The notes beneath the pieces are model-generated. The model saw only the letters and a list, made by a program, of their open reading frames with translations, was not told the DNA's origin and did not search any database. A stretch of 64,000 nucleotides of DNA, from positions 186,001 to 250,000 of IMG/VR virus record IMGVR_UViG_3300021520_000002, one strand, 5' to 3'. Each line of letters begins with the position of its first letter. The first letter of the stretch is position 1. A program made the translations under genes and the position numbers. This document shows, piece by piece, positions 2,565-61,651 of this stretch.

Positions 2565-3251
2565 TTATACTCCTTCTTTAACATCACCGTTTGGTAAAAT
2601 AACTTTATCTACTTCTTTTTTAAAAGTGTTAAAATTTTTAAGTTTTTTATAAATTTTTTGTTGTTCTTTTTGTATACTTTTTTTAGTTTCAGGTAAGTAA
2701 TATTTTGCATAACCTTTTTCGCCAAATTTATTTGAAAGATGATCAAAAGATCTTTGAATAAGTTGTTCTCTATCCATATCTAAATAATTATCTTTTCCAT
2801 AAAGATATGATCTTTTAATCATTAATTTTAGAGACGGTGTTTTATCACTATCTTGAATAATCTTTCCAAGTAGTGTTCTTGGAGTGTTAGGATTAGATGC
2901 ACGATGATCTTCACATGCATCGGCAATATCTTTAATTTGTTCTTCAGTAAACCATTTCTTAAGATTTTTGTCCGCTAATACGAATTTAGCAGAATTAATA
3001 TGATGTTCTTCTCTACCTTTTGGAATACCAACATCATGGTATGCTGCCGCCGCGAAAGTCATATTAACATCAACTTTTCTTTTTACAGCTAAATCTAATG
3101 CTGTATTCATAACTAATTTAACATGATCTTGCCGATGACCAGAATCATGTTTATCATACATGGGTATAATTTTTGATTCAATATATTCTTTTAATTCTGG
3201 ATTTACCAATTCTATATTTTCTACTTCAAATAAATAAGATATGCTAATCAT
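2565..3251 (-). CDS. HD-domain phosphohydrolase
   Basis: H..H, AAAYHDVG, EDHRAS, IQDSD motifs. Confidence 0.88.
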   Translation of the reverse strand: MISISYLFEVENIELVNPELKEYIESKIIPMYDKHDSGHRQDHVKLVMNTALDLAVKRKVDVNMTFAAAAYHDVGIPKGREEHHINSAKFVLADKNLKKWFTEEQIKDIADACEDHRASNPNTPRTLLGKIIQDSDKTPSLKLMIKRSYLYGKDNYLDMDREQLIQRSFDHLSNKFGEKGYAKYYLPETKKSIQKEQQKIYKKLKNFNTFKKEVDKVILPNGDVKEGV

Positions 3252-3268
3252 AATTAAGCTCCTAAATA

Positions 3269-3559
3269 TTATTTTCTATTATACCCATATTTATCTCGAA
3301 AAAAATTAAGATTATTTATAGACTTTTTTAAATTTTCAACATCTTGTTTTGGAGATGTTACTTGTTTTGGTATTTTCTGAACTGTTTTTTCTTTTTCATT
3401 ATAAAAATATCCTTTTGCTGGAAATTCTATTCTTTGTAATAAACGTGGTTTTGTTTCATAAGGTTCTTTTTCAAAACGAATTCCATTAAATGCTGGATTC
3501 CATACCCAATCAAGACCAGTGTTAGTTTCAAATTCAAATAAATACCCAATATTAATCAT
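3269..3559 (-). CDS. Hypothetical protein with MIxIxYLFE N-terminus shared with the neighbouring HD protein
   Basis: ORF with SD GGAG; N-terminal similarity to 2565-3251. Confidence 0.65.
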   Translation of the reverse strand: MINIGYLFEFETNTGLDWVWNPAFNGIRFEKEPYETKPRLLQRIEFPAKGYFYNEKEKTVQKIPKQVTSPKQDVENLKKSINNLNFFRDKYGYNRK

Positions 3560-3585
3560 AATTAAACTCCTTAAAATAAAATAAA

Positions 3586-3834
3586 TAAAAAAGTCTTGAG
3601 ACCCCTTTTCGGGATCTCAATATCACGGTCTTTCGACCGGTAGTAAAAGGTGACTAGTTCTTTTACCATCTCTTGAACCCATACATCTGGGTTAGACCGA
3701 TTCTGGAAAGGTTAGTTAAAAGATTAGTCAAATCTTTTTACACCTTTTCTCGTCCAGCAAGAGAGCTAGTTTCGAGACTATGATACAAAGTAATATATCA
3801 CTTAGGATATATTACCTTTCATAGACCTGTCTAT
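3586..3834 (-). ncRNA. Putative structured ncRNA (about 245 nt)
   Basis: Promoter motif at 3842-3851; at least 7 hairpins (e.g. CGGTC-GAAA-GACCG); terminal hairpin TTGAGATCCC/GGGGTCTCAA plus U-tract; no ORF in track. Confidence 0.6.
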
Positions 3835-3861
3835 TATATTAATTTCTATATGAAAAAGAAG

Positions 3862-4010: not shown

Positions 4011-4058
4011 TACTATATTAATTTCTATATCAAATCTTTGAATAACAAAAAGGCGGAG

Positions 4059-4766: not shown

Positions 4767-4851
4767 ATCTCCTCCTTTAATTTTTAAAATAATATATTAG
4801 AAACTTTATTGTTCCTAATTATACTATATCATTTCTATATGAAAAAGGAGA

Positions 4852-5389: not shown

Positions 5390-5409
5390 AAGACCTCTTT
5401 TTGAGCTGG

Positions 5410-6570: not shown

Positions 6571-7074
6571 TTAATCATTAACAAATTCAAACTTAGCACC
6601 CAAAATTTTCAATTCAGCATATATATGAGTTAGTTCTCTTTCGATACCTTGCCGATATTCATCATCATTAATATCTCTAACTCCATCTGAATGTAAATGA
6701 TTATTATTTTTAATAGATTTGAATATAATTTTATCATAAGTATGAATAAATTCTCGACCAGTTTTAAATAAGGCATCTCCTAATTCTTTAAAACCAAAAT
6801 AATAAGTATAAGCAACAGAATCAAATATTGTTCTGTCTGTAATTAAAATATCATATTTAGTAGCTAAAGCAATTTCACTTTGCAATTGATTACAGAATAT
6901 CCAAAGTTGAGTTTCTTTTGGTTTATCTTTATTAAAACCTAAAGGAGAATGTTTTGCGTTCTCCATGAAAATTCCCACCGTCTTATTTGGATTTTCTATT
7001 TTCATTTGTTTAGCTAAATCAAATACTGCTGTTGATTTTCCTGTTCCGTGAGTTCCTGTAAAGCTTATTTTCAT
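6571..7074 (-). CDS. P-loop nucleotide kinase/ATPase (AAA_28/NadR-like)
   Basis: GTHGTGKST; DRTIFD; DGVR. Confidence 0.8.
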   Translation of the reverse strand: MKISFTGTHGTGKSTAVFDLAKQMKIENPNKTVGIFMENAKHSPLGFNKDKPKETQLWIFCNQLQSEIALATKYDILITDRTIFDSVAYTYYFGFKELGDALFKTGREFIHTYDKIIFKSIKNNNHLHSDGVRDINDDEYRQGIERELTHIYAELKILGAKFEFVND

Positions 7075-7086: not shown

Positions 7087-8994
7087 TTATCCTATTAATG
7101 AATTTACAATGTATCTAATTTTTCCCATTGTAGATTTTGCAGCATCAACATCATCAAAATCAGTAGATGATGCATTTAAAGCATCCATTACATCATCAAC
7201 AAATACTGATGGAGTAAAAATTGTACAATTTAAATTTGGTATTCTTCCAACTCTATTTAAAAGTTGTGATAAATTTCCAATAGGTATTTTTTCATTACCT
7301 GCTTTTTCTACAGATGGAATATACATTTCTTTTATATTAATATTTAAACCTTCGCCGATATAATCTGTAGTTAATACTATGTCAATTTTACCTTTACTAA
7401 ATAAATCTTGAATTATAACATTATCTTGACTGTCTGAAGGATTAACTATTTGACCACCTTTTCTTTCTGGACCATACATAATTCCAAGTCTAGATCCAGC
7501 AGCATTACGAATCATTGGATTTGTAATATCGGCAATTCTTGATTCTCCAACAACAATATCAACATCTTTTTGACTATAAAATGGTTTTTTATATCCAATT
7601 CCAGTTTTAGGTTGAGGACCAACTTCATGACCAAATGATCCACCAAAACAATATTTAGCTATTTCATTTATTTTATATTTACTAAAGAAAACGAAACATA
7701 TTTGACGTTCCCCAGCGGCCAAAAACTTCTTTACAAGGTTTTTGGTATAATTAAAATCAGCAAGTTGATCATAACTTCTAATTTTTATTCTAGCTGTATT
7801 ACGTGCTTCAGATACAAAAGGAACTGTAAAATGTCTTCCATATGCTACATTATAAAATTTAATAAGTCTTGCTGCTGTTTTTTCATTTTGTGTACCAGTT
7901 AAACAAACCATTTTTGCAGATTTTGCCGCTCTACTTGATAATGTATAATCTATTGCAGATGATATTTGTTTAGCTCTTTTATCTACATTTTCTATACCAT
8001 CTGCTGTTAATTCTGCTTTTTGAATTTCATCAAAGACCATCAATTTTAAATTTTTCATTCTATCAATAAATCCTGGTGATGATTCATAAACAGTTATAAT
8101 AACTGGTTTTATTGTCCCACCTTTTTGATGATTTTCTATTGTATCTCCATCAGCATATTTAATTCCAACAAGTTGAGTAGTAACAAATTCTTTAACAGCT
8201 TTTGTAACATTTTCAAAATATTCAGTACTTAAATTTGAAATATTTTCTTCAATTTGTGTAATTTGTTCTGCCGGTAAATTTTGATATAATAATGTATTAC
8301 TAAGATTTGTTAAATTATTATATATATAATTTAATCTTTCTTTCAACGATTGTTGTGTTGCCATATTCATAACAGTTTGATTAAGATTATTATTAACCAA
8401 TCTGTACATATTTTGATTTTGTTGATTTGGTAAAAATAGATTTCGATTTTGATATTGAAAATAATTTATATATTGTAATATAAAAGAAACAAAATTTGTA
8501 ATAAATTCATCTTTAACAGTTTGATCAGTTAAAGCTCTAATTGGACTAAACCACATTATTTGTGGTAAATTTTCTGGATGCTCAATAATTTTTTTAAGAT
8601 TATCTAAAGTTACTTGAGCACGATGTATATCACCTGGATCATTAGGATTTGGTGGATCTAAAGTTACATTAATTCCTAATAATTTTTCAGCCCAATAAAC
8701 TATAACAGGAAGAGTTTTTCCTCCTCCAGGTGATTCAGTCATAATAAAAACATCATGATTTGGTTGACTAAGTTCATCAACTATTTGTCTTTGCCAACCA
8801 TGTAGTTGTGAAGAATTTTTAAGTTGAACTCCAACAGTTGCAGAACTAGGTTCCCACATAGTTTGACTTTGTGGTTGTGGAATTGGTGTAGCCTGTTGTA
8901 ATGGAGCTGGTTGTTGAGCTATATTTTGAAAATATGTATTTATATTTGCTCCTGAACCTAAAGAGCCTAAACTTTCAAGTAAACTTTTCTTCAT
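7087..8994 (-). CDS. Superfamily 2 helicase-like protein
   Basis: SPGGGKT, SPIRAL, FDEIQ, LTGT, GEGLNI, QLLNRVGR. Confidence 0.8.
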   Translation of the reverse strand: MKKSLLESLGSLGSGANINTYFQNIAQQPAPLQQATPIPQPQSQTMWEPSSATVGVQLKNSSQLHGWQRQIVDELSQPNHDVFIMTESPGGGKTLPVIVYWAEKLLGINVTLDPPNPNDPGDIHRAQVTLDNLKKIIEHPENLPQIMWFSPIRALTDQTVKDEFITNFVSFILQYINYFQYQNRNLFLPNQQNQNMYRLVNNNLNQTVMNMATQQSLKERLNYIYNNLTNLSNTLLYQNLPAEQITQIEENISNLSTEYFENVTKAVKEFVTTQLVGIKYADGDTIENHQKGGTIKPVIITVYESSPGFIDRMKNLKLMVFDEIQKAELTADGIENVDKRAKQISSAIDYTLSSRAAKSAKMVCLTGTQNEKTAARLIKFYNVAYGRHFTVPFVSEARNTARIKIRSYDQLADFNYTKNLVKKFLAAGERQICFVFFSKYKINEIAKYCFGGSFGHEVGPQPKTGIGYKKPFYSQKDVDIVVGESRIADITNPMIRNAAGSRLGIMYGPERKGGQIVNPSDSQDNVIIQDLFSKGKIDIVLTTDYIGEGLNINIKEMYIPSVEKAGNEKIPIGNLSQLLNRVGRIPNLNCTIFTPSVFVDDVMDALNASSTDFDDVDAAKSTMGKIRYIVNSLIG

Positions 8995-10648: not shown

Positions 10649-11664
10649 ACGGGATCACGTTTATAGATCACAACTTTTCCATCAACAATTTCTTCTGCTA
10701 CATGAATGAAATATTGTTTAAGTTGTTCTGATACTATATTTGGTTTACTTATTAAACTTGCAAATAATCTCTTAAGATCATTTACATCTGGTGGAACTTC
10801 TGATTTCAGAAATTGTTGGATTATTCCAAGAGCACTACTATCTTTTTTTAAGATATAATTAATTGCAAATGGTTCATATAATTTTAAAACTACTTGCCAA
10901 GGCAATCCAACTGTTCCAAGTTTAAGAGTGTGATCTGTTGTAATAACTAATCTTGCCGAATAATCAGTAGTTTTTCTTAATAATCCACCTCTGATTAATC
11001 CAGATTTTCCTTTCATTCTACTTTTAATCCAGTTATTTGTATCTAATAAAGTATGTTGAATTTGTTCCATAATTGGGACTTTAATATCATCTGGTAATTC
11101 TGGAGCGAAATACTTAATATTTCTTATTAGAGAGCCATAAAATTCTGACAAATCTGAAAAGTTAACAATAGTTTGTCCAGATGTTTTACTAACGGCAAGA
11201 TCTCTAATTCCAGCTGGTAAAAGTATAAATTTATCAATAAAGATTTTATTTTTATTTTCTTTAATAAACTTCACATTTTCTGGTTTATTCTTTTTATATT
11301 TATCTAAATTAATTTTATCAAAAATTGATACTAAATAACCTATACCTGAATTTCCACTTGCATCTTCAATAACTTCTCCTGTTGCTGATAAACTATATTT
11401 CCCTTTATTCTGTAAAAGTTTAGATATGTTTGTATCTAATCCAGATACAATTGAATAAGCTTCAGGATGTATTAATTTTGTTTTCAAATTAACATATGCA
11501 AAAGTTTTTCTACGTTCTGCACTTCCGAATCTTCCAAAAATCTCTTCTGAAAATAATCCATTAGGATCAGTTTTTCCAACTTTTTCATAAAGACGAACAG
11601 TTGTTACTTCTTTTAGTTTGTTTTTTGTTATGAATTCATCAATATCTAATAATTTAAGTTTCAT
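10649..11664 (-). CDS. rpoC: RNA polymerase beta'-like subunit (second RNAP), exon 1; spliced product about 432 aa
   Basis: GLFSEEIFG, LPAGIRD, KGKSGLIRGGLLRKTTDYSARLVI. Confidence 0.88.
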
Positions 11665-11685: not shown

Positions 11686-12330
11686 TTAATTACTAATTTG
11701 ACCTATATAATATTCTTCTAATTTTTTATAAAGTTCAGTATCGATATCATCAACATTCATATCTTTTAAAAGTAACATCATATAATCATTATCTTCTTCA
11801 CCATTCCAATTTTTGATATATGTTCCTTTTTTATATCCATGATTTTGCCGAAATCCATTAAGAATATTTTTGCCGATATACAATTTATACAATTGTTCTA
11901 AAGAGAATATTTCAACTTTATAACACAACATCATGAAATATCTAAGCATAGAAGATTGTTTTAGAGCGGCAAAAGCTAAACTTTCAATACATTCCTGAAC
12001 TGATTGTTTATTATCTTCTTGATCATTTAATACTCTAAAACTATTAATTACAAAATCAAAAACTTGTTTAAGATCTTTATTTTCTTTTAACAAATCACTC
12101 ATTATAAAATGCCAAATATCAACAAGTTCCAGTTGAAGTTGTTCTAAATTAACTTCTCCTTTTTTCCACCATTTCCAATCGGTGTGTTCAATCATTTCAG
12201 CACATTCTGTCCACACAGCACGATACCAAGGAATATCTCTTTCCTTCCAATTTTCACCATTAGTGTGAACACTAAGTTCTTCCTGCTTATCAAACATCTT
12301 TTGTAACATTTCGATTTGTGTCATTATCAT
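11686..12330 (-). CDS. dut: Dimeric (all-alpha) dUTPase
   Basis: ECAEM..WKWWK, ELVDIWHF, KNILNGFRQNHGYKKGTY.K.WNG.EDN. Confidence 0.9.
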   Translation of the reverse strand: MIMTQIEMLQKMFDKQEELSVHTNGENWKERDIPWYRAVWTECAEMIEHTDWKWWKKGEVNLEQLQLELVDIWHFIMSDLLKENKDLKQVFDFVINSFRVLNDQEDNKQSVQECIESLAFAALKQSSMLRYFMMLCYKVEIFSLEQLYKLYIGKNILNGFRQNHGYKKGTYIKNWNGEEDNDYMMLLLKDMNVDDIDTELYKKLEEYYIGQISN

Positions 12331-15431: not shown

Positions 15432-15465
15432 TATCGGCAAGATCTATTTCTAAATCTTGCCGATA
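15432..15465. repeat. Palindromic repeat TATCGGCAAGAT-N-ATCTTGCCGATA, copy 1 of 6 (others 30416-30450, 36120-36153, 40075-40107, 49447-49481, 51020-51053)
   Basis: Near-identical inverted repeats in intergenic gaps; GAAA/GCAA loop on the minus strand in five copies. Confidence 0.92.
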
Positions 15466-15475: not shown

Positions 15476-16324
15476 TTATTTCTCCTTTTTAACATCCTCG
15501 AACTCATTTCTATGACTGAAATTATTGAATACAAATACATGCATTCTTGGACTGAATAAATATCCAGTTCTTAAACAATAATCTACTGAATCATAACATG
15601 AATCTCTAAAATCCTGTATGAATGTAAATTCATCAGCATAAGTTAAATAGTCTGGAGTTAAAGGCATAATAGATATTGGTACTTGAGGATTAACATCTTC
15701 AATGAATTTAGTAATATCTTTTTCTGTATCTTTACTGTATACAAATTTATAATTTGCCGATAATGAAAATGGATAAACACTCAATAACTGATTCAATAAT
15801 ACATTTTTAAGTTTAAACATTTCTATAATATATTCAACACCTTTAACTATAATAGATGGATAGTAGTCTGGATTAAGCTTTGGTGAAATATTTAATTGAA
15901 TATTAACTGGTGGAAAATCTATAGCAAAAAATGCATCATCCAACAAAGTTCCATTAGTTTCAATTTCAGCAACTCTAATATCTAAACTTTCACGTAAAGA
16001 AACTAATAATTTCTTCAGAAATATTTTATTTAAAAATGGTTCACCACCAGTAATAAGAACTCTGCTTATATTATATTCTTTAATATGAATTGAACAAGCT
16101 TCCATAAATAATTTCATTTGGTCATCATTATCAATTTTTATCGGCAAAGAATATATAGATTCTATATTTGGAACATCATTTAATTTTAAATTATTGGTCC
16201 ATTTAGTATCACACCATTCACAATTCAAATTACAATTTCCTAATCTAATTAACAAACACGGTTCTCCTGCTGATGGTCCTTCACCTTGGACCGTTGTACA
16301 TAACTGTGTTACTATTCCACTCAT
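15476..16324 (-). CDS. queE: 7-carboxy-7-deazaguanine synthase-like radical SAM protein
   Basis: TVQGEG...IRLGNCNLNCEWCDT, ITGGEP, IETNGT, ISPKL, PRMH. Confidence 0.85.
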   Translation of the reverse strand: MSGIVTQLCTTVQGEGPSAGEPCLLIRLGNCNLNCEWCDTKWTNNLKLNDVPNIESIYSLPIKIDNDDQMKLFMEACSIHIKEYNISRVLITGGEPFLNKIFLKKLLVSLRESLDIRVAEIETNGTLLDDAFFAIDFPPVNIQLNISPKLNPDYYPSIIVKGVEYIIEMFKLKNVLLNQLLSVYPFSLSANYKFVYSKDTEKDITKFIEDVNPQVPISIMPLTPDYLTYADEFTFIQDFRDSCYDSVDYCLRTGYLFSPRMHVFVFNNFSHRNEFEDVKKEK

Positions 16325-30424: not shown

Positions 30425-30654
30425 GATTCTATTTCTAGATCTTGCCGATATTTATTAATTTTTCATATCTGATAATAATTTTTCAGCTTCTTTTTCGTTC
30501 ACTTTTACAAGTTGTAATTTATATCCTGCTTGAAGAACATATTTTTCAATATCATCAAAAAGATATTTATTATTACTATCTTCAACTGTTTCTGTCCAAA
30601 AATCATCTCCAAACTTTTCTATAGCTTTATAAACTATATTTCTTTCTTTTTTTG

Positions 30655-47432: not shown

Positions 47433-48224
47433 TTAATAATTAGCTATTATAGCTTTTGCTGAATGTGCATGAATAGATTCATCATTAACAACTTCAACTT
47501 TAAACTTTAAAATATCTTTAACTTGTGATAGTTTATTATAACATTCACGAGCTATATCTTCAACAAATTTAGAATTTTCATACATCTTTTCTGTAACTTC
47601 TTTTTCATCAGGACGTTTTAATACTGAATAAATTTCACAAGATGATGATTCTTCGGCAATTTTAACTAAATCTTCAATCCAAATAAATGCATCTTCTTTA
47701 GCTTCACAAATAATTTTTATTCTACTTTTTTGATTATGTGCTGATATCTTACTAATTTCTTTACTACATGGACAACTTGAAGTAGCAATAGTTTCAACAC
47801 TTAATCTGAACATATGACCTTTTGCTGTTTTAATTATATTAAACCAAATTTCATATGGTAATATTCCAGGTTCAAAACTTATTGGTGCGTGCTTAGTTAG
47901 AAAATAAGGAAAATAATAACCAAGATCACACAAATCTGCTTCTGTGGATCTTCTTATATTTTCTGCAATTTTAATCATTAATTTACTACTTAATTGTTCT
48001 TTTGCAAATTTCATTAAACCAATAGGTATTCTACTCATAGATATACCTTTAATATCTGGTGCAAGATCAACAAAACAACTAATATTAGCTACACTATGTT
48101 GAACTCCCCCATCTTTTTGTGATATGAATATCGGCAATTTAAAATCAGTTATACCCACTCTATTAATTGAAATTTTATGAATAGGTTCTTGTTCATTCTG
48201 AATATCTGGTAATTTTTTGTTCAC
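47433..48224 (-). CDS. folE2: GTP cyclohydrolase IB
   Basis: LPDIQN, RVGI, KGISMSR, SCPCSKEIS..SAHNQKS, LKRPDEK, FVEDIAR, ESIHAH. Confidence 0.93.
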   Translation of the reverse strand: MNKKLPDIQNEQEPIHKISINRVGITDFKLPIFISQKDGGVQHSVANISCFVDLAPDIKGISMSRIPIGLMKFAKEQLSSKLMIKIAENIRRSTEADLCDLGYYFPYFLTKHAPISFEPGILPYEIWFNIIKTAKGHMFRLSVETIATSSCPCSKEISKISAHNQKSRIKIICEAKEDAFIWIEDLVKIAEESSSCEIYSVLKRPDEKEVTEKMYENSKFVEDIARECYNKLSQVKDILKFKVEVVNDESIHAHSAKAIIANY

Positions 48225-48601: not shown

Positions 48602-49129
48602 TTATTTCTCCTCTTTTAATCTAATATGTTCATCCATAATTTTTTCAGAATAAATTCTTCCATTATAACTTGTTTTCTCTCCTAAAGCTTTAACTAAAAA
48701 ATCTTCTACATATTTTTGAATACCTGGTTTGCTACTTTCTCTGTTACCGGCAACATTTAACACTTCAATTTTGTTCCATTCAATCCATCTTTTAAAAGCT
48801 TCTTCTATTGGATTGATTATATATGGTTTTCCTAATTTCTTACATGTTCCTAAAGTTAATTTAGCTCCAGGACTATTTACATCTCCAAACCAAAGAGTAC
48901 CTTGAGAATTTTTTACATTTTCAATAGTTCTTGGTTTATACTGCCAATCAGAATGTTCTACTAATCCAAAATCTTTAAGTGTTTGATTAGGTCCTATATC
49001 TGTTCTATATCCTTTTGGTGCGGTTCCCCCAGTTTCAATTCCCAGTTTTTTACCAGCAAGAAGACCTCCAAAATCACCACCAGTTTGACCACCTGAGATT
49101 ATTTTTCTAATCATTTTTTCTCCATTCAA
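48602..49129 (-). CDS. SLOG-fold protein (molybdenum-carrier-like)
   Basis: IISGGQTGGD, GGTAPKG, RT..NV, LNVAGNRES. Confidence 0.8.
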   Translation of the reverse strand: MNGEKMIRKIISGGQTGGDFGGLLAGKKLGIETGGTAPKGYRTDIGPNQTLKDFGLVEHSDWQYKPRTIENVKNSQGTLWFGDVNSPGAKLTLGTCKKLGKPYIINPIEEAFKRWIEWNKIEVLNVAGNRESSKPGIQKYVEDFLVKALGEKTSYNGRIYSEKIMDEHIRLKEEK

Positions 49130-50695
49130 ATTGTAAAATTGTTAAATGTAATAAAGTTTCTAGTTTTAATTCAGTTTTAGTATTAAATTCTTTACTCTCT
49201 TTAATTTTTCTTACTAGAGCATTATGAGCATTAATATATTCTTCAATTGGTCCAAAATTTGTAATAAAATTTAAAGTTAAAATATCATCATTTTTAAGAT
49301 GTGCATCTTTATAATTTGAATTGCTTATATTTTTCATTATTAATATTTTATTTTCTTCTATTTCAATATAATCTTCTTTTATAATTTCTTTTAAAGAATT
49401 TAACGTTTGTACTTTCACAGTATCTTTTTCTCCTAAAAAAATATTTTATCGGCAAGATTCTATTATTAGATCTTGCCGATATTTATCAAATATATAATTT
49501 CTATATATAAATTGACATTTTATAATTTGACTTTTTTGATTGGTTCACATGTTATAGGATCTAATCTAAAGATAACTACATCTCCATAAATTTTTGCATA
49601 TGCAACTTCCAATTCTCCAATTTTATTTTTTGTAAGATATGGTGGAGCAGAGATAAGACTACTACTTGGACTAAAATTCCAAACGATTACTTTAATCCAA
49701 CCTTCTTTAGCATTAGATTCAACATCTCTATATGAATAATGTTCATTACAAATTGTTTTATAAAAACATGTTATATCACTAGCTTGAATATTAGTATAAT
49801 CTAATAACTCATATTCATCTTTATGTTCTAACATATATTTTTCTGTTTCTTTTAATATTATTTCTCCATTAACTATCATTAGTTTCCTCCTATTTATTAA
49901 TTGTCCTGAATATAACAGAACTTCTATCTTGTAATTCGTTATCTTGGTTGTCTAATAAAATTTTAAAATTCCAATCTAAAACATTTTTATCTTCTTCAAG
50001 AATTTTAATTGTTTCTGTTAATTTTTTTATTAATTCTTTAGTTTCATTTAAATTATCTAATGTGATATAACATTCTTGATATTTGGGGATAAGTTCTATT
50101 CTCATTTCTTTCTTGGACCTATTGCTGAATCAAGTAATTTAATACTTGTTTTTATTGTTTTTTGAGTAAAGAATCCTGCTGGTAAATTTACTCCAATAAC
50201 TTCAATTAGACATATTGGACAAACTTCAACATTAGTTTCTTTTTTTGTTTTTTCATCAATTAATTTAATATGTAAAGCTGTATAATTTTCAACATCAGTG
50301 TATATCATTCCATCAGCAATTATTTTTTGTCTTGTTCTTTCTAATTCAAATCCACCACAGTATGAACAATTATATTTTACTTTTTTTGTTTTTTTCATTC
50401 TTCTTCTCCTTTCACTTCAAAAAACATATTCATTTCAAAAGGTGCTTCACAACCAAGATATAAATATTTACCAAATTCAGACATTATAGACCATAGTTGA
50501 TGTTTTGAATATCCATTTTCATCTGTTTTTGGTAATTTAAATTCAAATGTAGGTTTTCCTCCAGATTGTATAATTAATAATTGTAATTCATCATAATTTT
50601 TTTTTAGAATTTCTTTTCCACGGTCAGTTAATTTTATCAAAACATAATCATTAACATTAAAAGGTATTTTTTTCATTTGATCTCCTAAAATTAAG

Positions 50696-50842: not shown

Positions 50843-51059
50843 TTATATTCTATTTTTTTCCATATCTATTATAAGAGTTGTTAATCTTATTTTTTCTTCA
50901 GTTAAAAATTTTAAATTATTAGTTAAATAATTTTTATTATGATACTCTAATAAAGCAATTGCTTTAAGTACTTCTGCAATTTCTTGTATGCTTTTATATT
51001 CCATTATTCTTCTCCTTTTTATCGGCAAGATCTATTGCTAAATCTTGCCGATATTTATT

Positions 51060-53048: not shown

Positions 53049-54183
53049 GCGGCCTCCTTGATTTTCTCCTTCTAAAATTCAATTGTGACTTTGATGTTTT
53101 TTGGAAATGGTTTTGGAAGTTTATCTTTTAATAAATAAACTGTTCCTATCCAAGGTCTTTCTCCATCATCCTCTTCCTTATATCTGACTGTACCTTTTGT
53201 TTCTTTTTCTATTTCAAAATCTAACTCTATTTTTTTATCATCAAAAGATTTACTCATTTTCCTTTTTCTCCTTCTTTGTTATTTTCCTAAGAATTTTTAC
53301 AACTTCATCAATTATCTTACTCCATATTATTTGTATTAAAAGAAATAAGAGTAGAGCTTGTAAAAATCCCCCATACCATATAATACTAAAATTTGATGGA
53401 AAATATAATTCACAAAAGATTCTCATAATTGATAATAATGATATTGATATTAAAAATATTAGTATATATCTCATCTTTATCCCTTCTTTGTTAAAGTTAT
53501 TTCAACATTACAACTATATTCCATATCATAATCATCAAAATTAATATTTAATGTTTCTGCTAATTTTTTACCTTTTTCAAGAATTGCTTCTTCTAAAGGT
53601 TCAACATCAAAAAATTCAACATCTACAACATCTTCAATAGCATAAGTTTCAATTATTATTTTATCCATTTCTTATTTCAGCTATCATTTCATTAAATTTA
53701 ATTCTTGCCGATTTATATTCATTTACAATTTCATCATAATTTATATCATCAAAATTTCCGAAAGTTCTGTTTAATATACTTCTATATTCATTAATTACAT
53801 TTGACATTTTATCAATATCATAATTAAGAGGAATTTCTTTTTCTACTTCTTCCATTCTTTTTTCAAATTCTTCATGTGATTTCATTTCTTACTCCTTAAC
53901 AACTAACTCTATAATTGTGATTTCTACTTCATAATCTTTTCCATCAATATATGTTAAATCGTGATCATCTTTTGGAGTTGTACATATTTTTAGAAACTCT
54001 TCCATATATTCTTTAGCTTTATCTTCAGATGTGAATATGAATTTACTTTTAATAACTGTCTTCTGTTCAAAACAAGCTAATTGTCCACGAATACTGAGTT
54101 GATATAATTTAAGATCTTTAATATTATAAGTTGTTGTTTCAGAATATTTAAATAAACTATCAGGTTTTATATTTGTTTTCTTC

Positions 54184-56974: not shown

Positions 56975-58120
56975 CTAACCAATTAAGTACCAATATATTT
57001 TCCAACCATTTTCAACGAAAATCCAATCATAGGTCCATTTATCTCCAGTTTGTGTCCAATATCTTGTCCAATCGGCACCAACTCCTGGCTCTGTTGCTGA
57101 TGAAGATCTATGTTTAAGAATACAAGTATAAATATGATCACCATTGTAAAGAACTCTATCAATTTTATAAGATTTATTAGTAATCCAATTATCATATAAA
57201 GTTACACCTGGTTCTGTTTGAGATGATGCTGTATGATTTCTTAAACATCTATAAACTAAATTATTACTTGCATAAATTATATTATCAGTAATGTAAGCTG
57301 TTCCAGAAGTCCAATTACCATATAAATCAACACCTGGTTCATTTCTATTTGATGATGTATGATCTAATAAACACCCATAAACATGAGTAGACAAATATAA
57401 TGCTTGTCCTTGACCATAAGCTGTAGCTAATATCCAATCACCATCATATAAACCAACATAAGTCCAACCAAATTCTCTTAATATTTCTAATAAATACATA
57501 ACAAATAATTGTTGATTTCTAGCATCAAATCCTGGAACTGGAGTTACTCTTGGGTGTGCGTTTGTCATATAAATTGATCTAAGACCAAGACCAGAACCAA
57601 GACTATATCTAAATTCTTCCAAATTTGCCGTATCAGATGCATCTCCACCATCTATAAGAGCTTTTAAATCTATATATCCATCTGCTATTTCTATTTCACC
57701 AGTTGTTGGATCTGGTGGAGGATCTGGATCTGGTGGTATTGTAGGTTCTGGTGGTGGAGTTGCCGATAAATCAAATAAAGATTCATAAAATGGAACACCA
57801 ACAGTTAATATATCAGACCAATTTTCATATAAGCTTCTTATATCTTCACCAGCAATAAGTTCTGGAATTGGTGGAGCTTGAACTGGTAAATTCATACTGA
57901 ATTTAATAGCTATATACCCATATAAAGGTAATAGAAAATCAGTCATTGAAGCTTTAACAGCACCAATCTTATAACTATCATAAGAAGTTTGTAAATCTGT
58001 TAAAAATCCATTCATAATAGATAATAATTCTGGTTTATTTGTATAACTAGTTTCATTTATTCTTGTTGTCCAATGACTTTGAGCTAAAGGTATCCATGTT
58101 GCGATCTGACGTAATAACAT
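56975..58120 (-). CDS. Virion protein with C-terminal CBM5/12-like repeats
   Basis: Three W...Y......Y.C...H.S....EPGV repeats; Pro-rich linker; next to PAAR. Confidence 0.7.
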   Translation of the reverse strand: MLLRQIATWIPLAQSHWTTRINETSYTNKPELLSIMNGFLTDLQTSYDSYKIGAVKASMTDFLLPLYGYIAIKFSMNLPVQAPPIPELIAGEDIRSLYENWSDILTVGVPFYESLFDLSATPPPEPTIPPDPDPPPDPTTGEIEIADGYIDLKALIDGGDASDTANLEEFRYSLGSGLGLRSIYMTNAHPRVTPVPGFDARNQQLFVMYLLEILREFGWTYVGLYDGDWILATAYGQGQALYLSTHVYGCLLDHTSSNRNEPGVDLYGNWTSGTAYITDNIIYASNNLVYRCLRNHTASSQTEPGVTLYDNWITNKSYKIDRVLYNGDHIYTCILKHRSSSATEPGVGADWTRYWTQTGDKWTYDWIFVENGWKIYWYLIG

Positions 58121-58920: not shown

Positions 58921-59035
58921 TTTTGTAAAAAGTGAAATGTTGACATCGATGTGCCTATCAATGTCAGCGGCTAACTCTTATCGTCTTTAAATAAAAAAGA
59001 TCATTAGACGATTGATCTAAAAAACAGGAGGTAGT

Positions 59036-59881
59036 ATGGTGTATAAAGAACGCTTTATAGCTGTTGTTAAGGTTAATGGTTCTATCTTACGGGAAAGAGG
59101 AGAATCAAGAGATGAAGTTTATATCCCATTTGGTAGTGAATATTCTCTACTTCTTAAAAATAAGGAAAGTAGAAAAGCACAAGTTCAAGTTCAGATTGAT
59201 GGGGTGGATGTTCTTGGTGGAAATTCATTAGTTTTAGAACCATTCCAAGAAATGGAACTTGAAAGATTTCTTGATAGTTGTAATATGAGTCAAGGAAATA
59301 AATTCAAATTTATTCAGAAGACTCAACAAATAGTTGAACATCGTGGAGATAAAATTGATGATGGATTCATAACAGTTATATTTCAGTTTGAAGCTGAAAA
59401 ACCTGAAAAGAAAATTGTTGAAGAACATCATCATCATACTTATCATGATCATTATCCGTGGAGAGTATATCCAACATATTATAGTAGTAATCCAGTTTTC
59501 ACATCTGGATTAACTAGAGGCAGTTGTACTGGTGAAAATCTTGGTGGAGTTTTTTCTTCCAATATTTCATCTAATATTTCTGATTCAATACAAGTTAATT
59601 CTTGTAATTTTGCCGATATTAAACAAGCACCAATAATTGATCAAGATGAAGGAATAACTGTTAAAGGGAGTATTTCTAATCAACAATTTAGATATGCTTA
59701 TATCGGCAGATTGGAAGAAAATTCTCATACAATTAACATTAGATTGAAAGGAACAAAATCTAATGGTGTTGTTGTTGATCAACCAATAACAGTTAAAACT
59801 AAGTTAGAATGTAAAACTTGCGGAAAGAAGTCTAATTCTAATGAAAAGTTTTGTTCCAATTGTGGAACATTTTTAAATTAA
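59036..59881 (+). CDS. Hypothetical phage protein with C-terminal zinc ribbon
   Basis: SD AGGAGG; His-rich segment; CKTCG...CSNCG. Confidence 0.8.
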   Translation: MVYKERFIAVVKVNGSILRERGESRDEVYIPFGSEYSLLLKNKESRKAQVQVQIDGVDVLGGNSLVLEPFQEMELERFLDSCNMSQGNKFKFIQKTQQIVEHRGDKIDDGFITVIFQFEAEKPEKKIVEEHHHHTYHDHYPWRVYPTYYSSNPVFTSGLTRGSCTGENLGGVFSSNISSNISDSIQVNSCNFADIKQAPIIDQDEGITVKGSISNQQFRYAYIGRLEENSHTINIRLKGTKSNGVVVDQPITVKTKLECKTCGKKSNSNEKFCSNCGTFLN

Positions 59882-59956
59882 AATAGAGTAAGCTGATAAT
59901 TGATGGGCACATTTTTCTAATTGTATATAGAAATGGTAGTTTTGGAGGCGGAAAAA

Positions 59957-61651
59957 ATGGATATAGAAATAAATAATATGCATGTTTTTGTTAGTAACTA
60001 TTCTTTTACCGGAGTAGTTAAAACATCACTTGTAAAGGATTTTCATTTATTAAAACTTAAAATTGAATTTTTTAAAATTTTAAGTAATGATAGTAAAATA
60101 ATTTCAATGATATCAAAGACTTGTCAAGAAGATCCAAGAAACGGTAACTCTTTAGGACTTGTAAGTACAAAAGTTGATTATGAAAAAGTTTTGAATTTTT
60201 ATGATGCGGAAGAATTTAGAAATTATTTGCATTTTATAACGGCAAGACCATTCTTAGATGATAAAGTTAATGGTCAGTTATGGACAATTGAATTTAAATT
60301 TCAGAATGATGTACATTATTATAAGGTGTTATTAAGTACAAATGAAGTGTTAAGATTATATAATGTTGTTAATTCTTATTATTCTCTTTATTTTGCTTTA
60401 GATTTTATTGTAAAAGAACATTCAAATCTAGCTCCAGTAGAAAAAGTTGAAGAGAAAAAAATAACAGAATATATTCCAAGCAGAAAAGAAGTTGTTGAAG
60501 AAAAATTTGAAGTTAAGGAGAGAAATGGAACAGATGATATTTTTGAATTATGTTTAACAAATTCAATTAAGTCAAGCTTGATTCATTATACAACCAATTA
60601 TTTTAAATTCTTTTCATCAGAACATTGTAAGATTGTTACTAATGATCAGAAGACACAAATTAAAGTAGTTTGTCCGATATTAATTCCTGGAAAGTTTAAT
60701 ATTGATGAGAACTATTTTAAATCTTTAATTGTGACATCATCATTACATTTGGATAGTATAACTTTTACAATTAAGAAGATTTTATCTTTGCTATTACAGA
60801 GTTATGATAAATATAATAATCCTCTACATTTAATGATGATTAGTTATTTATTATTTGTATATATGTTAAGATATATTTATGATGTGAACAGAGATATATT
60901 TAGAGATTATTTTACTAAATTTATTTGTGTTCCAGAGATGCAGAGACATTTAATTATGAATTTAATTCGTAATAATTTTTCGGATTATCACAATAAAATC
61001 TTCTTTGATTTTATAGCTGTTAATCCTCAGGATATTATGAATGAACAGACAAATAAAGAAATAAACACATTTTCTGAAACTTATAAACATCTTCTTCCGA
61101 TTTCACAAGAAGAATTTGCCGATAAAGTATTCAATAGTCTTAATGGTCAAAATAAAAAATTTCCTGTTGACTTTAAAATAGCCAACAAGAAAATGATAGA
61201 CATTAAAAATCTATTTGAAGAGAAACCAAAACAAACATTACAATCAAAATTGTTTGATTATGAAGGAACATTAGATACAACAGCTGGAATATTTAATGAA
61301 TATACTTTTTTAAATTATACAAAGAATAATGGAAGTAAAATTATAAGTAAAACATATAAACATCTTTTAGATTATATTCAGAATCCATCTTCTCTTCTAT
61401 TAATGAATGAAAAAGATGTGCCAAAAGATGTTCTTAATTTATTTGATTTACTTTCAAAATCAGTTCTAAATACAGAGAAATTAGCTAAGGATAATATATC
61501 AACATTAAATTATTATAATATATTAGTTGAATCTTTGCCGAATGCAAATTTATTTAAACATACAACTTTATTATATGTTGTATATCAAATCATGGTACCT
61601 TATTATTATGATGTCTATGGTACAACACAATTTTATGATAATTTTTTATAG
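59957..61651 (+). CDS. Large hypothetical protein, start revised to MDIEIN
   Basis: SD GGAGG after promoter motif at 59925. Confidence 0.75.
   Translation: MDIEINNMHVFVSNYSFTGVVKTSLVKDFHLLKLKIEFFKILSNDSKIISMISKTCQEDPRNGNSLGLVSTKVDYEKVLNFYDAEEFRNYLHFITARPFLDDKVNGQLWTIEFKFQNDVHYYKVLLSTNEVLRLYNVVNSYYSLYFALDFIVKEHSNLAPVEKVEEKKITEYIPSRKEVVEEKFEVKERNGTDDIFELCLTNSIKSSLIHYTTNYFKFFSSEHCKIVTNDQKTQIKVVCPILIPGKFNIDENYFKSLIVTSSLHLDSITFTIKKILSLLLQSYDKYNNPLHLMMISYLLFVYMLRYIYDVNRDIFRDYFTKFICVPEMQRHLIMNLIRNNFSDYHNKIFFDFIAVNPQDIMNEQTNKEINTFSETYKHLLPISQEEFADKVFNSLNGQNKKFPVDFKIANKKMIDIKNLFEEKPKQTLQSKLFDYEGTLDTTAGIFNEYTFLNYTKNNGSKIISKTYKHLLDYIQNPSSLLLMNEKDVPKDVLNLFDLLSKSVLNTEKLAKDNISTLNYYNILVESLPNANLFKHTTLLYVVYQIMVPYYYDVYGTTQFYDNFL

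What the first reader, a model, noticed from the sequence alone, without database searches (positions are those of the whole stretch)
2919..61540. Strong over-representation of TGCCGA/TCGGCA (core TTGCCGAT) across the window
Seen: by manual count about 50 copies on both strands (12 in palindromes), mostly inside CDSs, e.g. near 2919, 3129, 6649, 7528, 10953, 11870, 15754, 19435, 22855, 24850, 28226, 33704, 37638, 43838, 48130, 53704, 59610, 61116. A rough mononucleotide expectation at an assumed 27% GC is about 6, and CG looks scarce elsewhere. Established analogy: DNA-uptake sequences, HIP1 and Chi are enriched words, and uptake sequences often pair into intergenic hairpins. Inference: a selected genome-marking site for protein binding, packaging, recombination or base modification.
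Basis: partly seen in the sequence, partly recalled or inferred. Interest (0 to 1): 0.7.

Follow-up and report, generated by a model that had tools for sequence, protein, structure and literature searches.

The report
Hyper-abundant TTGCCGNT word in jumbo phage
An uncultivated freshwater jumbo phage and its relatives carry the 8-base word TTGCCGNT about 50 times more often than chance, on both strands and in every reading frame. This resembles bacterial DNA-uptake or Chi sequences, so the DNA itself is under selection, though the factor that reads the word is still unknown.

Summary
TGCCGA/TCGGCA occurs 53 times in the window against 4.0±1.9 expected. The full word is TTGCCGNT: 47 copies in the window against 1.5, and 240 in the 285.6-kb phage genome against about 4, the most over-represented 8-mer.

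It is not a codon artefact. It lies in all six frames, sense 96 and antisense 89. It survives synonymous-codon and codon-pair nulls. It holds 16-23% of all GCC, CCG, GGC, TCG and CGG codons.

There are two settings.
- 28 inverted pairs form conserved 14-16-bp stem-loops 5-16 nt after stop codons; six are in the window.
- 184 single copies lie almost entirely inside genes.

Relatives down to about 58% RNA-polymerase-beta identity share both word and hairpin. A 45% relative lacks the word. Positions of single copies turn over while density is kept.

Best reading: a clade-specific recognition word read on duplex DNA regardless of orientation, a USS/DUS-like self-mark, reused in pairs as terminator-like hairpins.

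These readings were tested and are disfavoured:
- Chi-like polarity
- sigma-28 promoter
- known methyltransferases
- decayed hairpins
- a motif shared with the bacterial genomes sampled

The reader protein and the function remain inferred.

The parts
2919..61541 (.). Span of all 53 TGCCGA/TCGGCA hexamers. It includes 17 near-cognate copies lacking the full 8-mer, e.g. TTGCCGAA at 10953, 11845, 54477 and 61535, and CTGCCGAT at 12672.
15433..15464 (-). Hairpin 1: ATCGGCAAGATTTA-GAAA-TAGATCTTGCCGAT on the sense (-) strand. It lies 12 nt after the stop of the radical-SAM ORF 15476-16324, and a ribosome-binding site follows.
30417..30449 (-). Hairpin 2: two inverted TTGCCGAT arms with a GAAA loop on the sense strand, 6 nt after an upstream stop.
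36121..36152 (-). Hairpin 3: inverted arms with a GCAA loop, 5 nt after the stop of the RNA polymerase beta-like gene 36157-38127.
40076..40107 (-). Hairpin 4: arms TTGCCGAT and CTGCCGAT, forming a G-U pair on the sense strand, with a GAAA loop. It lies 5 nt after the stop of ORF 40112-40978. It is the only window hairpin flagged terminator-like by the consensus scan.
49448..49480 (-). Hairpin 5: inverted arms. Here an AT-rich promoter-like box at 49494 lies upstream, so the hairpin sits in a 5' leader.
51021..51052 (-). Hairpin 6: inverted arms with a GCAA loop, 8 nt after the stop of the RNA polymerase beta'-like gene 51060-53048.
1037..1044 (+). Single TTGCCGCT, antisense in the ribonucleotide reductase gene.
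2919..2926 (-). Single TTGCCGAT, sense in ORF 2565-3251 (reads I-A-D).
3129..3136 (+). Single TTGCCGAT, antisense in ORF 2565-3251.
6649..6656 (+). Single TTGCCGAT, antisense in ORF 6571-7074.
7528..7535 (-). Single TTGCCGAT, sense in helicase-like ORF 7087-8994.
7923..7930 (+). Single TTGCCGCT, antisense in ORF 7087-8994.
11191..11198 (-). Single TTGCCGTT, sense in RNA polymerase beta'-fragment ORF 10621-11664.
11870..11877 (+). Single TTGCCGAT, antisense in ORF 11686-12330. A direct near-copy TTGCCGAA lies 25 nt upstream at 11845.
11965..11972 (-). Single TTGCCGCT, sense in ORF 11686-12330.
15754..15761 (+). Single TTGCCGAT, antisense in radical-SAM ORF 15476-16324.
16140..16147 (-). Single TTGCCGAT, sense in ORF 15476-16324 (reads L-P-I).
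19274..19281 (-). Single TTGCCGTT, sense in RecQ-like ORF 18206-19723.
19554..19561 (+). Single TTGCCGCT, antisense in ORF 18206-19723.
20995..21002 (-). Single TTGCCGAT, sense in ORF 20893-21351.
22855..22862 (-). Single TTGCCGAT, sense in ORF 22072-23382.
23212..23219 (+). Single TTGCCGAT, antisense in ORF 22072-23382.
24850..24857 (+). Single TTGCCGAT, antisense in ORF 24217-24906.
25421..25428 (-). Single TTGCCGAT, sense in ORF 25304-25726.
27472..27479 (+). Single TTGCCGTT, antisense in ORF 27216-27611.
28226..28233 (+). Single TTGCCGAT, antisense in 5'-3' exonuclease-like ORF 27969-28928.
33704..33711 (+). Single TTGCCGAT, antisense in ORF 33622-34032.
36961..36968 (-). Single TTGCCGTT, sense in RNA polymerase beta-like gene 36157-38127.
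37639..37646 (-). Single TTGCCGAT, sense in RNA polymerase beta-like gene 36157-38127.
39267..39274 (+). Single TTGCCGAT, antisense in small ORF 39230-39427.
43838..43845 (+). Single TTGCCGAT, antisense in DHH-phosphoesterase-like ORF 43036-43959.
48130..48137 (-). Single TTGCCGAT, sense in ORF 47433-48224.
48746..48753 (-). Single TTGCCGGT, sense in ORF 48602-49129.
53705..53712 (+). Single TTGCCGAT, antisense in small ORF 53661-53885.
57760..57767 (+). Single TTGCCGAT, antisense in ORF 56975-58120.
59610..59617 (+). Single TTGCCGAT, sense in ORF 59036-59881 (+).
60238..60245 (-). Single TTGCCGTT, antisense in ORF 59921-61651 (+).
61116..61123 (+). Single TTGCCGAT, sense in ORF 59921-61651 (+).
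61754..61761 (+). Single TTGCCGGT, sense in ORF 61663-62247 (+).
61794..61801 (-). Single TTGCCGTT, antisense in ORF 61663-62247 (+).
62877..62884 (-). Single TTGCCGCT, antisense in ORF 62584-62928 (+).
63798..63805 (+). Single TTGCCGGT, outside any called gene.

Best explanation
TTGCCGNT is a recognition word specific to this clade of freshwater jumbo phages. Selection on the DNA itself keeps it at about one copy per 1.2 kb.

I infer that a sequence-specific protein, most likely phage-encoded, reads it on duplex DNA regardless of orientation. The density, about 50 times above background, then marks the phage chromosome as 'self'. That mark could serve selective binding, packaging, compartmentalisation or protection. 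This is the logic of bacterial DNA-uptake sequences applied to a virus.

Inside genes the word is fitted into whatever frame tolerates it. In intergenic spacers two inverted copies form the base of a conserved 14-16-bp stem-loop just after stop codons. That stem-loop additionally works in the transcript as a terminator or 3'-end hairpin.

Shown: the enrichment, its DNA-level nature, orientation and frame independence, clade-wide conservation with positional turnover, and the base-paired hairpins.

Inferred: that a protein reads the word, that the protein is phage-encoded, and what the mark is used for.
For: - Enrichment. The window has 53 hexamers against 4 expected and 47 8-mers against 1.5. 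The genome has 240 against about 4, and TTGCCGAT is its top 8-mer.
- DNA-level selection. The word lies in all six frames, with 96 sense and 89 antisense copies spread evenly along genes. It survives synonymous and codon-pair nulls. It holds 16-23% of all GCC, CCG, GGC, TCG and CGG codons and 8% of all CpGs.
- Protein-like specificity. Positions 1-6 and 8 are fixed and position 7 is free. Changes in the core fall to expectation, with no depletion.
- Selection on density. About 47% of single sites are kept in the 79%-identical relative against a 25% baseline. Only 7 of 98 are kept in 67-70%-identical relatives against an 11% baseline. Yet those relatives are equally enriched: TTGCCG occurs 221 times against 30 in a 256.7-kb relative.
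- Distribution. Conserved segments hold more sites than accessory segments, 0.89 against 0.46 per kb. Spacing is slightly more even than random, CV 0.85, p about 0.015.
- Clade specificity. The word is present in relatives with about 58% RNA-polymerase-beta identity and absent in a 45% relative. Flank preference drifts between lineages.
- Not shared with the bacteria sampled. Co-binned bacterial contigs show only about 2-fold, codon-type excess. In 401 bacterial genomes the word-to-control ratio is 1-4.
- Hairpins. There are 28 in the genome, 24 of them 5-16 nt after a stop. The sense strand folds better, loops are GNRA, G-U wobbles occur, and there are compensatory changes including at N7.
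Against: - No reader protein was identified.
- No Pfam match was found in the genome for Sigma70 r2 or r4, ParB_N, HU, PDDEXK_1 or RNase III.
- There are no binding, modification or transcript-end data. The only runs holding the phage are kept as assembled DNA contigs.
- A self-marking word of this kind has, to my knowledge, no described phage precedent.
- The host is unknown, so a host-determined signal is not excluded.
- A weak excess on the + strand (108:76 among single copies) might hint at a polar process, although a codon-aware null already predicts about 52%.
Confidence: 0.4

Rival explanations
1. Chi-like signal. A translocating helicase-nuclease reads the word on one strand. This could be host RecBCD/AddAB or a phage enzyme. 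Reading the word switches the enzyme from degradation to recombination, which protects linear or concatemeric phage DNA.
For: The word has 7-8 specified bases with a free position and a density of one per 1-2 kb. It lies inside genes in all frames, with turnover of positions. Phages that accumulated host Chi are documented, and in phage MD8 Chi is the commonest octamer (PMC12315714).
Against: - Documented Chi-rich phages are strongly polar (20:3 and 32:0) and clustered near one end.
- Here orientation is 136:104 overall. Both orientations are enriched 7-16 fold over a codon-aware null that already predicts 52% forward, and sites are spread evenly.
- No PDDEXK_1 nuclease domain is found in the phage.
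- The word is not enriched in 401 sampled bacterial genomes or in co-binned bacterial contigs.
- Flank preferences drift with phage lineage.
Confidence: 0.15
2. Replication priming signal. The word is the template site at which the phage primase, or a prim-pol enzyme, starts lagging-strand fragments. It therefore has to occur often on both strands.
For: - Both strands carry it, at one per 2.1-2.7 kb per strand, close to Okazaki-fragment size (own knowledge).
- Spacing is slightly regular.
- Selection acts on density rather than position.
- The specificity is clade-specific and drifting, as expected for a phage enzyme.
Against: Known primases read about 3 bases, so they need no enrichment (own knowledge). 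The only primase-like hit is a sub-threshold DnaG zinc-ribbon match (16.8 bits) that hmmscan did not confirm. This reading gives no reason for inverted pairs in RNA-type hairpins.
Confidence: 0.12
3. Target of a sequence-specific base modification or nick that marks phage DNA.
For: The word is asymmetric and fixed-length with one free base, like Type IIG/III sites. It also holds a large share of the few CpGs.
Against: No match was found to N6_N4_Mtase, C5 DNA_methylase, N6_Mtase, MethyltransfD12 or TGT/DpdA in a genome estimated 95% complete. Modification sites are usually not enriched. Transition variants of the CpG are not depleted. No read-level data are available.
Confidence: 0.08
4. By-product of the hairpins. 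Single copies are decayed, captured or gene-converted arms of a conserved, perhaps mobile, terminator hairpin, with no function of their own.
For: Single copies resemble hairpin arms, and in relatives the resemblance extends inward (GATCTTGCCG). The hairpins are highly uniform.
Against: - In this genome single copies share only TTGCCGNT(A), not the inner AGATC arm.
- 84 copies have C, G or T at position 7, whereas 55 of 56 arms have A.
- Single copies sit inside conserved genes in all frames, where insertion is impossible.
- They are not in local structures.
- Only 8 of 184 lie outside called genes.
Confidence: 0.08
5. Coding artefact: favoured codon pairs or a recurrent peptide such as x-Ala-Asp or Ile-Gly-Lys.
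For: A codon-pair Markov model reproduces most of the hexamer count (80 against 55, 64 against 55). A low-GC bacterium shows about 2-fold excess of TGCCGA from codon effects.
Against: - Six frames give at least six different peptides.
- The word uses the rarest codons.
- The 8-mers and 9-mers exceed even the self-trained codon-pair model by z 5-9, and the synonymous shuffle by 7-20 fold.
- About a quarter of copies are intergenic hairpin arms.
Confidence: 0.02
6. Sigma-28 (FliA/SigD) type promoter -10 element, GCCGATAA.
For: TTGCCGATA contains the published FliA -10 consensus (PMC4203485, found).
Against: - No TAAA -35 lies at 14-16 nt, either in the hairpins (read directly from the sequences) or at single sites (no information upstream of -6).
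- Copies are equally sense and antisense, and single copies are almost never intergenic.
- Position 7 is free, which breaks the CGA core.
- The phage has no sigma-70 family domains.
- The phage has its own AT-rich promoter-like box.
Confidence: 0.02

Closest known systems
DNA uptake sequences (USS of Pasteurellaceae, DUS of Neisseriaceae)
   Same: A short asymmetric word at about one per kb on both strands. Most copies lie inside genes in whichever frame tolerates them. Intergenic copies pair in inverted orientation into terminator-like hairpins. The word is lineage-specific, with 'dialects' in the flanks. Features of USS/DUS are from own knowledge and PMC2817400 and PMC1939737 as listed.
   Different: The carrier is a virulent-type jumbo phage, not a competent bacterium. 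No uptake machinery is involved, and the word is not enriched in the bacterial genomes sampled. The inner stem and loop of the hairpins are also conserved.
Chi sites, including Chi-rich lambdoid and Pseudomonas phages (PMC12315714)
   Same: An octamer-scale word accumulated far above chance in a phage genome. It can be the commonest octamer, and density rather than position matters.
   Different: Chi in phages is 87-100% in one orientation, clustered near one end, and identical to the host's Chi. Here the orientation ratio is 57:43, the spread is even, and no match was found in the bacterial genomes sampled.
Conserved-sequence stem-loop terminators of giant phages with their own RNA polymerases (phiKZ, 201phi2-1; PMC11512511)
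   Same: Many terminators of one phage share a sequence motif that folds into a stem-loop, in phages that encode multisubunit RNA polymerases. The 28 hairpins here sit right after stop codons and look like RNA structures.
   Different: No transcript 3' ends are available here. Only some hairpins are followed by a T-run. About 25 other, unique-sequence hairpins also exist. No dispersed intragenic half-motif has been reported for phiKZ-type terminators, to my knowledge.
HIP1 (GCGATCGC) of cyanobacteria
   Same: A hyper-abundant octamer inside genes with quasi-regular spacing and long-unknown function (PMC5861425 and PMC4390886, listed).
   Different: HIP1 is a palindrome tied to orphan methyltransferases. 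This word is asymmetric and no methyltransferase was found.
Stoperators of cluster A mycobacteriophages (own knowledge)
   Same: An asymmetric protein-binding word dispersed over a whole phage genome.
   Different: Stoperators number about 25-35, lie mostly between genes, are oriented with transcription, and bind the repressor of a temperate phage. Here there are 240 copies, single copies are intragenic, and there is no orientation rule.

Membership tests
DNA uptake sequence (USS/DUS) | Short word hyper-abundant on both strands, roughly one per kb | tested here: met
   240 copies in 285.6 kb, 136 forward and 104 reverse
DNA uptake sequence (USS/DUS) | Copies inside genes in several frames, plus inverted intergenic pairs forming terminator-like hairpins | tested here: met
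   All six frames; 28 inverted pairs, 27 intergenic
DNA uptake sequence (USS/DUS) | Carried by a naturally competent bacterium and read by its uptake receptor | tested here: not met
   The carrier is a virus record. It is recurrent in freshwater metagenomes. No excess was found in co-binned or sampled bacterial genomes.
Chi | Strong orientation polarity relative to DNA ends or replication | tested here: not met
   57% forward against 52% expected from a codon-aware null. Both orientations are enriched 7-16 fold. Chi-rich phages show 87-100% polarity.
Chi | Same word enriched in the host chromosome and recognised by RecBCD/AddAB | tested here: inconclusive
   The host is unknown. 401 genomes of one phylum and one co-binned MAG were negative. 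Enzyme recognition is not testable here.
Sigma-28 / SigD promoter | -10 GCCGATAA with -35 TAAA 14-16 nt upstream, oriented toward a gene | tested here: not met
   No upstream information at single sites. No TAAA at that spacing in the hairpins (sequence). Sense and antisense copies are about equal. Position 7 is free.
HIP1-type palindrome linked to methyltransferases | Palindromic word with a cognate orphan DNA methyltransferase | tested here: not met
   The word is asymmetric. Four methyltransferase families are absent.
Giant-phage conserved-motif terminators | Stable stem-loop with shared sequence immediately downstream of genes | tested here: met
   24 of 28 lie 5-16 nt after a stop. Folding energies are -18 to -25 kcal/mol. 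Covariation is present.
Giant-phage conserved-motif terminators | Transcript 3' ends map to the stem-loop | not testable with these tools
   No RNA run holds the phage
Intrinsic (bacterial-type) terminator | GC-rich stem followed directly by a U-tract | tested here: inconclusive
   One of three window hairpins in the scanned 20 kb is flagged. Tails are T-rich in some hairpins and absent in others.

The most novel reading that the evidence does not exclude
A clade of jumbo phages has evolved its own USS-like self-recognition code. A phage protein reads TTGCCGNT wherever it occurs. It uses the roughly 50-fold density difference to tell phage DNA from host DNA, for packaging, compartment entry or retention, protection from a phage nuclease, or replication priming. 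The same word doubles as the stem of sequence-specific terminators.
Probability: 0.3. Interest if true: 0.85.

Novelty: new variant of a known kind. Interest (0 to 1): 0.66.

Why it matters
Hyper-abundant genomic words such as USS/DUS, Chi, KOPS and HIP1 have each revealed a DNA-handling machine. To my knowledge, none intrinsic to a virus and independent of orientation has been described.

Here the word is clean: seven fixed bases, about 50-fold excess, and clade-specific. Those properties give a direct handle for pull-down or DAP-seq to find the reader protein in phages that cannot yet be cultured.

If it is a self-mark, it would show how a giant phage tells its own chromosome from the host's without base modification. 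It also gives a simple sequence signature for recognising members of this clade in metagenomes, including contigs mis-binned into bacterial MAGs.

Tried and rejected
1. Codon or peptide artefact. Rejected by synonymous shuffling, codon permutation and a codon-pair Markov model, and by the frame and rare-codon tables.
2. VSP-like repair drive. Transition neighbours of the CpG are not depleted.
3. Decayed or gene-converted hairpin arms. Rejected by the single-copy logo, position-7 variants and intragenic positions.
4. Hidden hairpins at single sites. Local folds are no more stable than controls.
5. Sigma-28 promoter. It fails on -35, orientation and position 7, and the phage has no sigma domains.
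6. Early promoter. A separate AT-rich box fills that role.
7. Absolute strand polarity. Raw counts favour the + strand in both arms of two genomes. A codon-aware null explains most of it, so I do not claim it.
8. Enzyme candidates. These Pfam families had no hit in the genome: N6_N4_Mtase, DNA_methylase, N6_Mtase, MethyltransfD12, TGT, Ribonuclease_3, PDDEXK_1, ParB_N, Bac_DNA_binding. A DnaG zinc-ribbon hit was sub-threshold and unconfirmed.
9. Motif shared with bacteria.
   - The hairpin pattern hits bacterial assemblies only by chance, in an unrelated high-GC repeat, or on phage-like contigs inside MAG bins.
   - 401 genomes of one phylum have a word-to-control ratio of 1-4.
   - Twelve bacterial contigs of the MAG that holds a related 256.7-kb phage contig show only codon-type 2-fold excess.
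10. Known RNA family. Rfam finds only two tRNAs in the window.
11. Close relatives in GenBank phages. There are none by megablast. The nearest RNA-polymerase-beta matches are about 23% identical, in AR9, PBS1, S6 and phiR1-37.
12. TAG recoding, despite a CUA-anticodon tRNA. Reading TAG through barely raises coding density.
13. Flank conservation at single sites. It does not differ from random aligned positions.

Full report
**What the window is.** The 64-kb window is positions 186,001-250,000 of a single 285,572-bp virus record with 29.4% GC. CheckV estimates the record at 95% complete. The same sequence recurs in freshwater and lake metagenomes from several studies.

The window encodes these products:
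- ribonucleotide reductase
- two helicases, one RecQ-like
- an NAD-dependent ligase
- a 5'-3' exonuclease-like protein
- several fragments of multisubunit RNA polymerase beta and beta'

The nearest named phages by RNA polymerase beta are AR9, PBS1, S6 and phiR1-37, at only about 23% identity. No close GenBank phage exists by megablast. This is therefore an uncultivated jumbo phage that carries its own RNA polymerases. Genes lie in two convergent arms, + from about 264 kb through 0 to 107 kb and - from 107 to 264 kb. Almost all of the window is in the - arm.

**The observation.** TGCCGA occurs 53 times on both strands of the window. Dinucleotide-preserving shuffles give 4.0 ± 1.9. CpG is scarce, at observed/expected 0.48 in the window. 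In the genome 2,505 CpGs are observed against about 6,177 expected from the base counts, a ratio of about 0.41.

In the whole genome TGCCGA occurs 201 times against 15-19 expected. TTGCCGAT occurs 156 times against about 2 and is the most over-represented 8-mer under order-1 and order-2 Markov models. The other strongly enriched words (TCTGGAAC, ACAAGTGG, GGAACATC) are confined to a few repetitive coding regions at 0-40 kb and 260-285 kb. They are tandem coding repeats, not dispersed words.

**The true word.** I counted all single-base variants.
- Position 7 is free: TTGCCG followed by A, C, G or T and then T occurs 156, 39, 25 and 20 times. Each is 16-100 times its expectation.
- Position 1 is soft.
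- Any change at G3, C4, C5 or G6 returns counts to expectation.

The word is therefore TTGCCGNT. It occurs 240 times in the genome against about 4 expected, and 47 times in the window against 1.47 ± 1.27. The transition neighbours of the CpG are not depleted, which argues against a repair-driven (VSP-like) origin.

**It is not a coding artefact.**
- *Frames and orientation.* Of the TTGCCGAT copies inside genes, 55 are sense and 49 antisense. They lie in all six frames and read as x-Ala-Asp, Leu-Pro-Ile, Ile-Gly-Lys, x-Ser-Ala, x-Arg-Gln or x-Cys-Arg.
- *Synonymous shuffling within genes.* 56 observed against 7.8 for sense copies, and 49 against 2.5 for antisense copies.
- *Codon-order permutation.* Expected counts fall to 1.75 and 0.88.
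- *Codon-pair Markov chain.* The model is trained on the real genes, so it already contains the motif's codon pairs. It still falls short for the 8-mer (27 ± 5.7 and 21 ± 4.7) and the 9-mer (11 and 9, against 37 and 34 observed).
- *TTGCCGNT by arm.* The excess over synonymous shuffles is 7-9 fold in sense and about 16 fold in antisense, in both arms.
- *Rare codons.* The word contains 23% of all GCC, 17% of CCG, 17% of GGC, 17% of TCG and 23% of CGG codons of the genome.

For comparison, a low-GC bacterial genome shows only about a 2-fold excess of TGCCGA, alongside many similar codon-derived words.

**Two settings.**

*Hairpins.* Twenty-eight inverted pairs, 27 of them intergenic, form palindromes of the type TATCGGCAAGATyTA-GAAA-TAGATCTTGCCGATA.
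- Twenty-four begin 5-16 nt after the stop codon of the upstream gene, and a ribosome-binding site follows.
- On the transcribed strand they fold at -18 to -25 kcal/mol.
- In about 13 of the 28, the sense strand is 1.8-5 kcal/mol more stable than the antisense strand. This is due to G-U wobbles and GNRA loops (GAAA, GCAA). The reverse holds in 3-4.
- Across 68 hairpins from this genome and its relatives, stem pairs covary. Position 7 pairs as T-A, C-G or G-C with 94% Watson-Crick pairing. Inner stems switch GATCT/AGATC to GACCT/AGGTC or GAGCT/AGCTC.

These are base-paired elements that most likely act in RNA, at 3' ends of transcription units. Only some are followed by a T-run. One, at window 49448-49480, lies downstream of a promoter-like box, hence in a leader. 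About 25 other intergenic hairpins of unique sequence also exist, so the motif hairpins are a special class with conserved sequence. Conserved-motif stem-loop terminators are documented in phiKZ and 201phi2-1, giant phages with their own RNA polymerases (PMC11512511).

*Single copies.* There are 184 single TTGCCGNT copies.
- 176 lie fully inside called genes. Several of the other eight are degenerate hairpins.
- They are spread evenly along genes.
- They are not embedded in unusually stable local folds.
- Their flanks are as conserved as random aligned positions.
- In this genome they share only T-TGCCG-N-T-(A) with the hairpin arms, not the inner AGATC.

**Relatives.**
- The hairpin pattern retrieved five IMG/VR contigs, G001-G005.
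- A genome-contig scan found phage-like contigs hidden in four MAG bins. These include a 256.7-kb contig, G006:C1, with 30.9% GC and 22 hairpins.
- G002 is collinear with 21-114 kb of this genome at about 79% nucleotide identity. The others are 67-70% identical where alignable.
- RNA polymerase beta of G006 and G003 is 58% identical to this phage's.
- In G001-G003, G006 and L175, a TTGCCG-centred word is at or near the top of the over-represented 6- or 8-mers. Examples are TCTTGCCG 113 against 2 in G006, 37 against 0.3 in G002 and 30 against 0.9 in G001, and TTGCCG 21 against 2.5 in L175.
- In the fragments G004 and G005 other words rank highest, although TTGCCGAT is present in both (3 and 7 copies) while the reversed control word is absent.
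- The emphasis shifts between lineages. It is TTGCCGAT-A here, G-N-TCTTGCCG-N-T in G006 and G001, and TTGCCGTT in L175.
- A more distant relative, L177 (45% RNA-polymerase-beta identity, 25% GC), has no excess: 3 copies in 22 kb.

**Turnover.** Hairpin arms are positionally conserved: 15 of 16 in G002. Single copies are kept at 47% in G002 against a 25% baseline. In the four more distant relatives only 7 of 98 are kept, against an 11% baseline. Selection therefore maintains the number of copies rather than particular positions.

Density is higher in segments conserved with G002 (0.89 per kb) than in unaligned segments (0.46 per kb). Spacing is slightly more even than random, with CV 0.85 against 0.99 ± 0.07.

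**Orientation.** Overall there are 136 forward and 104 reverse copies. Among single copies the split is 108 to 76. Raw counts favour the + strand in both arms of this genome and of G006. However, the two arms differ in coding make-up, and a synonymous-shuffle null already predicts about 52% forward. Both orientations are enriched 7-16 fold. I therefore treat polarity as unproven.

This matters for the Chi comparison. Phages known to have accumulated Chi carry it 20:3 or 32:0 in one orientation, clustered at one end (PMC12315714). That pattern is not seen here.

**Other readings tested.**
- *Sigma-28 promoter.* The word contains the -10 consensus GCCGATAA (lead). There is no TAAA at 14-16 nt, orientation is random, position 7 is free, and the genome has no sigma-70 family domains.
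- *The phage's own promoter.* It has a very conserved AT-rich promoter-like box, TTT(C/T)ATATAGAAAT(A/T)AT, with about 55 intergenic copies co-oriented with genes. This recalls the AT-rich early promoters of AR9 and phiKZ (PMC5312081). TTGCCGNT is therefore not that promoter.
- *Candidate enzymes.* No Pfam match was found for four DNA methyltransferase families, TGT/DpdA, RNase III, RecB-type nuclease, ParB or HU.
- *A word shared with bacteria.* In the one MAG bin checked contig by contig (G007), the word sits almost only on the hairpin-bearing, phage-like contigs. Bacterial contigs of the MAG holding G006:C1 show only codon-type excess. In 401 genomes of one bacterial phylum the word-to-control ratio is 1-4. 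The host remains unknown. The strong Shine-Dalgarno sites visible downstream of the hairpins argue, from own knowledge, against a Bacteroidota host despite the binning.

**Interpretation.** The evidence shows a DNA-level word that is independent of orientation and frame, maintained by density, and specific to the clade. Its specificity profile is that of a protein-DNA contact: fixed core, one free base, drifting flanks.

Its anatomy is closest to bacterial uptake sequences: single copies inside genes plus inverted pairs as terminator-like hairpins. But it sits in a virus. I therefore rank first an orientation-independent protein recognition site that marks phage DNA, at confidence 0.4. The rivals and their confidences are:
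- a Chi-like signal, 0.15
- a priming signal, 0.12
- a modification or nick target, 0.08
- a by-product of the hairpins, 0.08
- codon artefact and sigma-28 promoter, about 0.02 each

The reader protein and the purpose of the mark are inference. No binding, modification or transcript data exist for this phage.

**Novelty.** The class of genomic word is known: USS/DUS, Chi and HIP1. Conserved-motif terminators are known in giant phages. The new combination is a hyper-abundant asymmetric word that is intrinsic to a phage, non-polar, and doubles as hairpin stems across a clade of uncultivated jumbo phages. I did not find this described, in two literature searches or in my own knowledge. I rate it a new variant of a known kind.

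Noticed in passing
window 3839, 4828, 5085, 6413, 10430, 12695, 13060, 20684, 29006, 38174, 40990, 49494, 58153, 58401, 58434, 63376, 63724, 63903 (- strand); 6457, 58567, 58905 (+ strand): A highly conserved AT-rich box, TTT(C/T)ATATAGAAAT(A/T)AT, has about 55 intergenic copies in the genome. Nearly all are co-oriented with the downstream gene, and they often lie just after a hairpin. It looks like the early promoter of a virion RNA polymerase (compare AR9 AAATATATATTAT-N6-G).
   Followed up: partly
window 46054-46128 (-) and 21988-22063 (-): A tRNA with anticodon CUA (amber suppressor; ARAGORN calls it Pyl) and a tRNA-Ile(GAU). Reading TAG through barely raises coding density, and TAG ends 47 of 413 called genes. 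There is therefore no sign of genome-wide recoding.
   Followed up: yes
window 3560-6007: A 2.4-kb stretch where my codon-scored gene caller accepted no gene. The mechanical ORF list does hold two ORFs there (4059-4766 and 5410-6141, - strand). The stretch carries three of the promoter-like boxes in tandem (3839, 4828, 5085), with a fourth just beyond it at 6413. It may hold short early genes or non-coding RNAs.
   Followed up: no
window 12331-13157, especially 12640-12700: A gene-free gap with a GC-rich segment (…GGCTGCCGATGGCGCGGAC…) directly downstream of a promoter-like box at 12695 on the - strand. It may be a small structured RNA. Rfam found nothing at gathering threshold.
   Followed up: no
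window 10621-11664, 36157-38127, 51060-53048, 54184-55374: Several separate genes for fragments of RNA polymerase beta and beta' (split multisubunit polymerase, possibly two sets), as in AR9- and phiKZ-type jumbo phages.
   Followed up: partly
L022 (G003:C1) 9172-10884 and 11996-12199: In relative G003 the RNA polymerase beta gene is interrupted by about 1.1 kb between residues 575 and 589. The insert could be an intron, an intein or a homing-endonuclease insertion.
   Followed up: no
genome 0-40 kb and 260-285 kb (outside the window): The words TCTGGAAC, ACAAGTGG and GGAACATC (140-180 copies each) come from long tandem Gly-Thr-Ser-type coding repeats in a few large, GC-richer genes, probably fibre or collagen-like proteins. 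My simple gene caller mis-framed at least one of them.
   Followed up: partly
L035, L038, L040, L042, L044, L049, L082, L085, L086 (one high-GC groundwater Gammaproteobacteria MAG): An unrelated 34-nt palindromic repeat, (A/C)(A/C)GGTCGGCAAGAAGCGTGGTTCTTGCCGACC(T/G)T, occurs on many contigs of one 67%-GC MAG. It is a REP-like element that happens to share the CGGCAAGA stem.
   Followed up: no
G006-G009 (MAG bins labelled Lentimicrobiaceae, Bacteroidetes, Nitrospiraceae and one untitled): Contigs of this phage clade, including a near-complete 256.7-kb genome, are binned inside bacterial MAGs in public assemblies. The hairpin pattern is a quick way to flag them.
   Followed up: partly
window 11845-11877: A direct repeat of the word 25 nt apart (TTTTGCCGAA…TTTTGCCGATA) inside ORF 11686-12330. 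It is one of only four close non-palindromic pairs in the genome.
   Followed up: no
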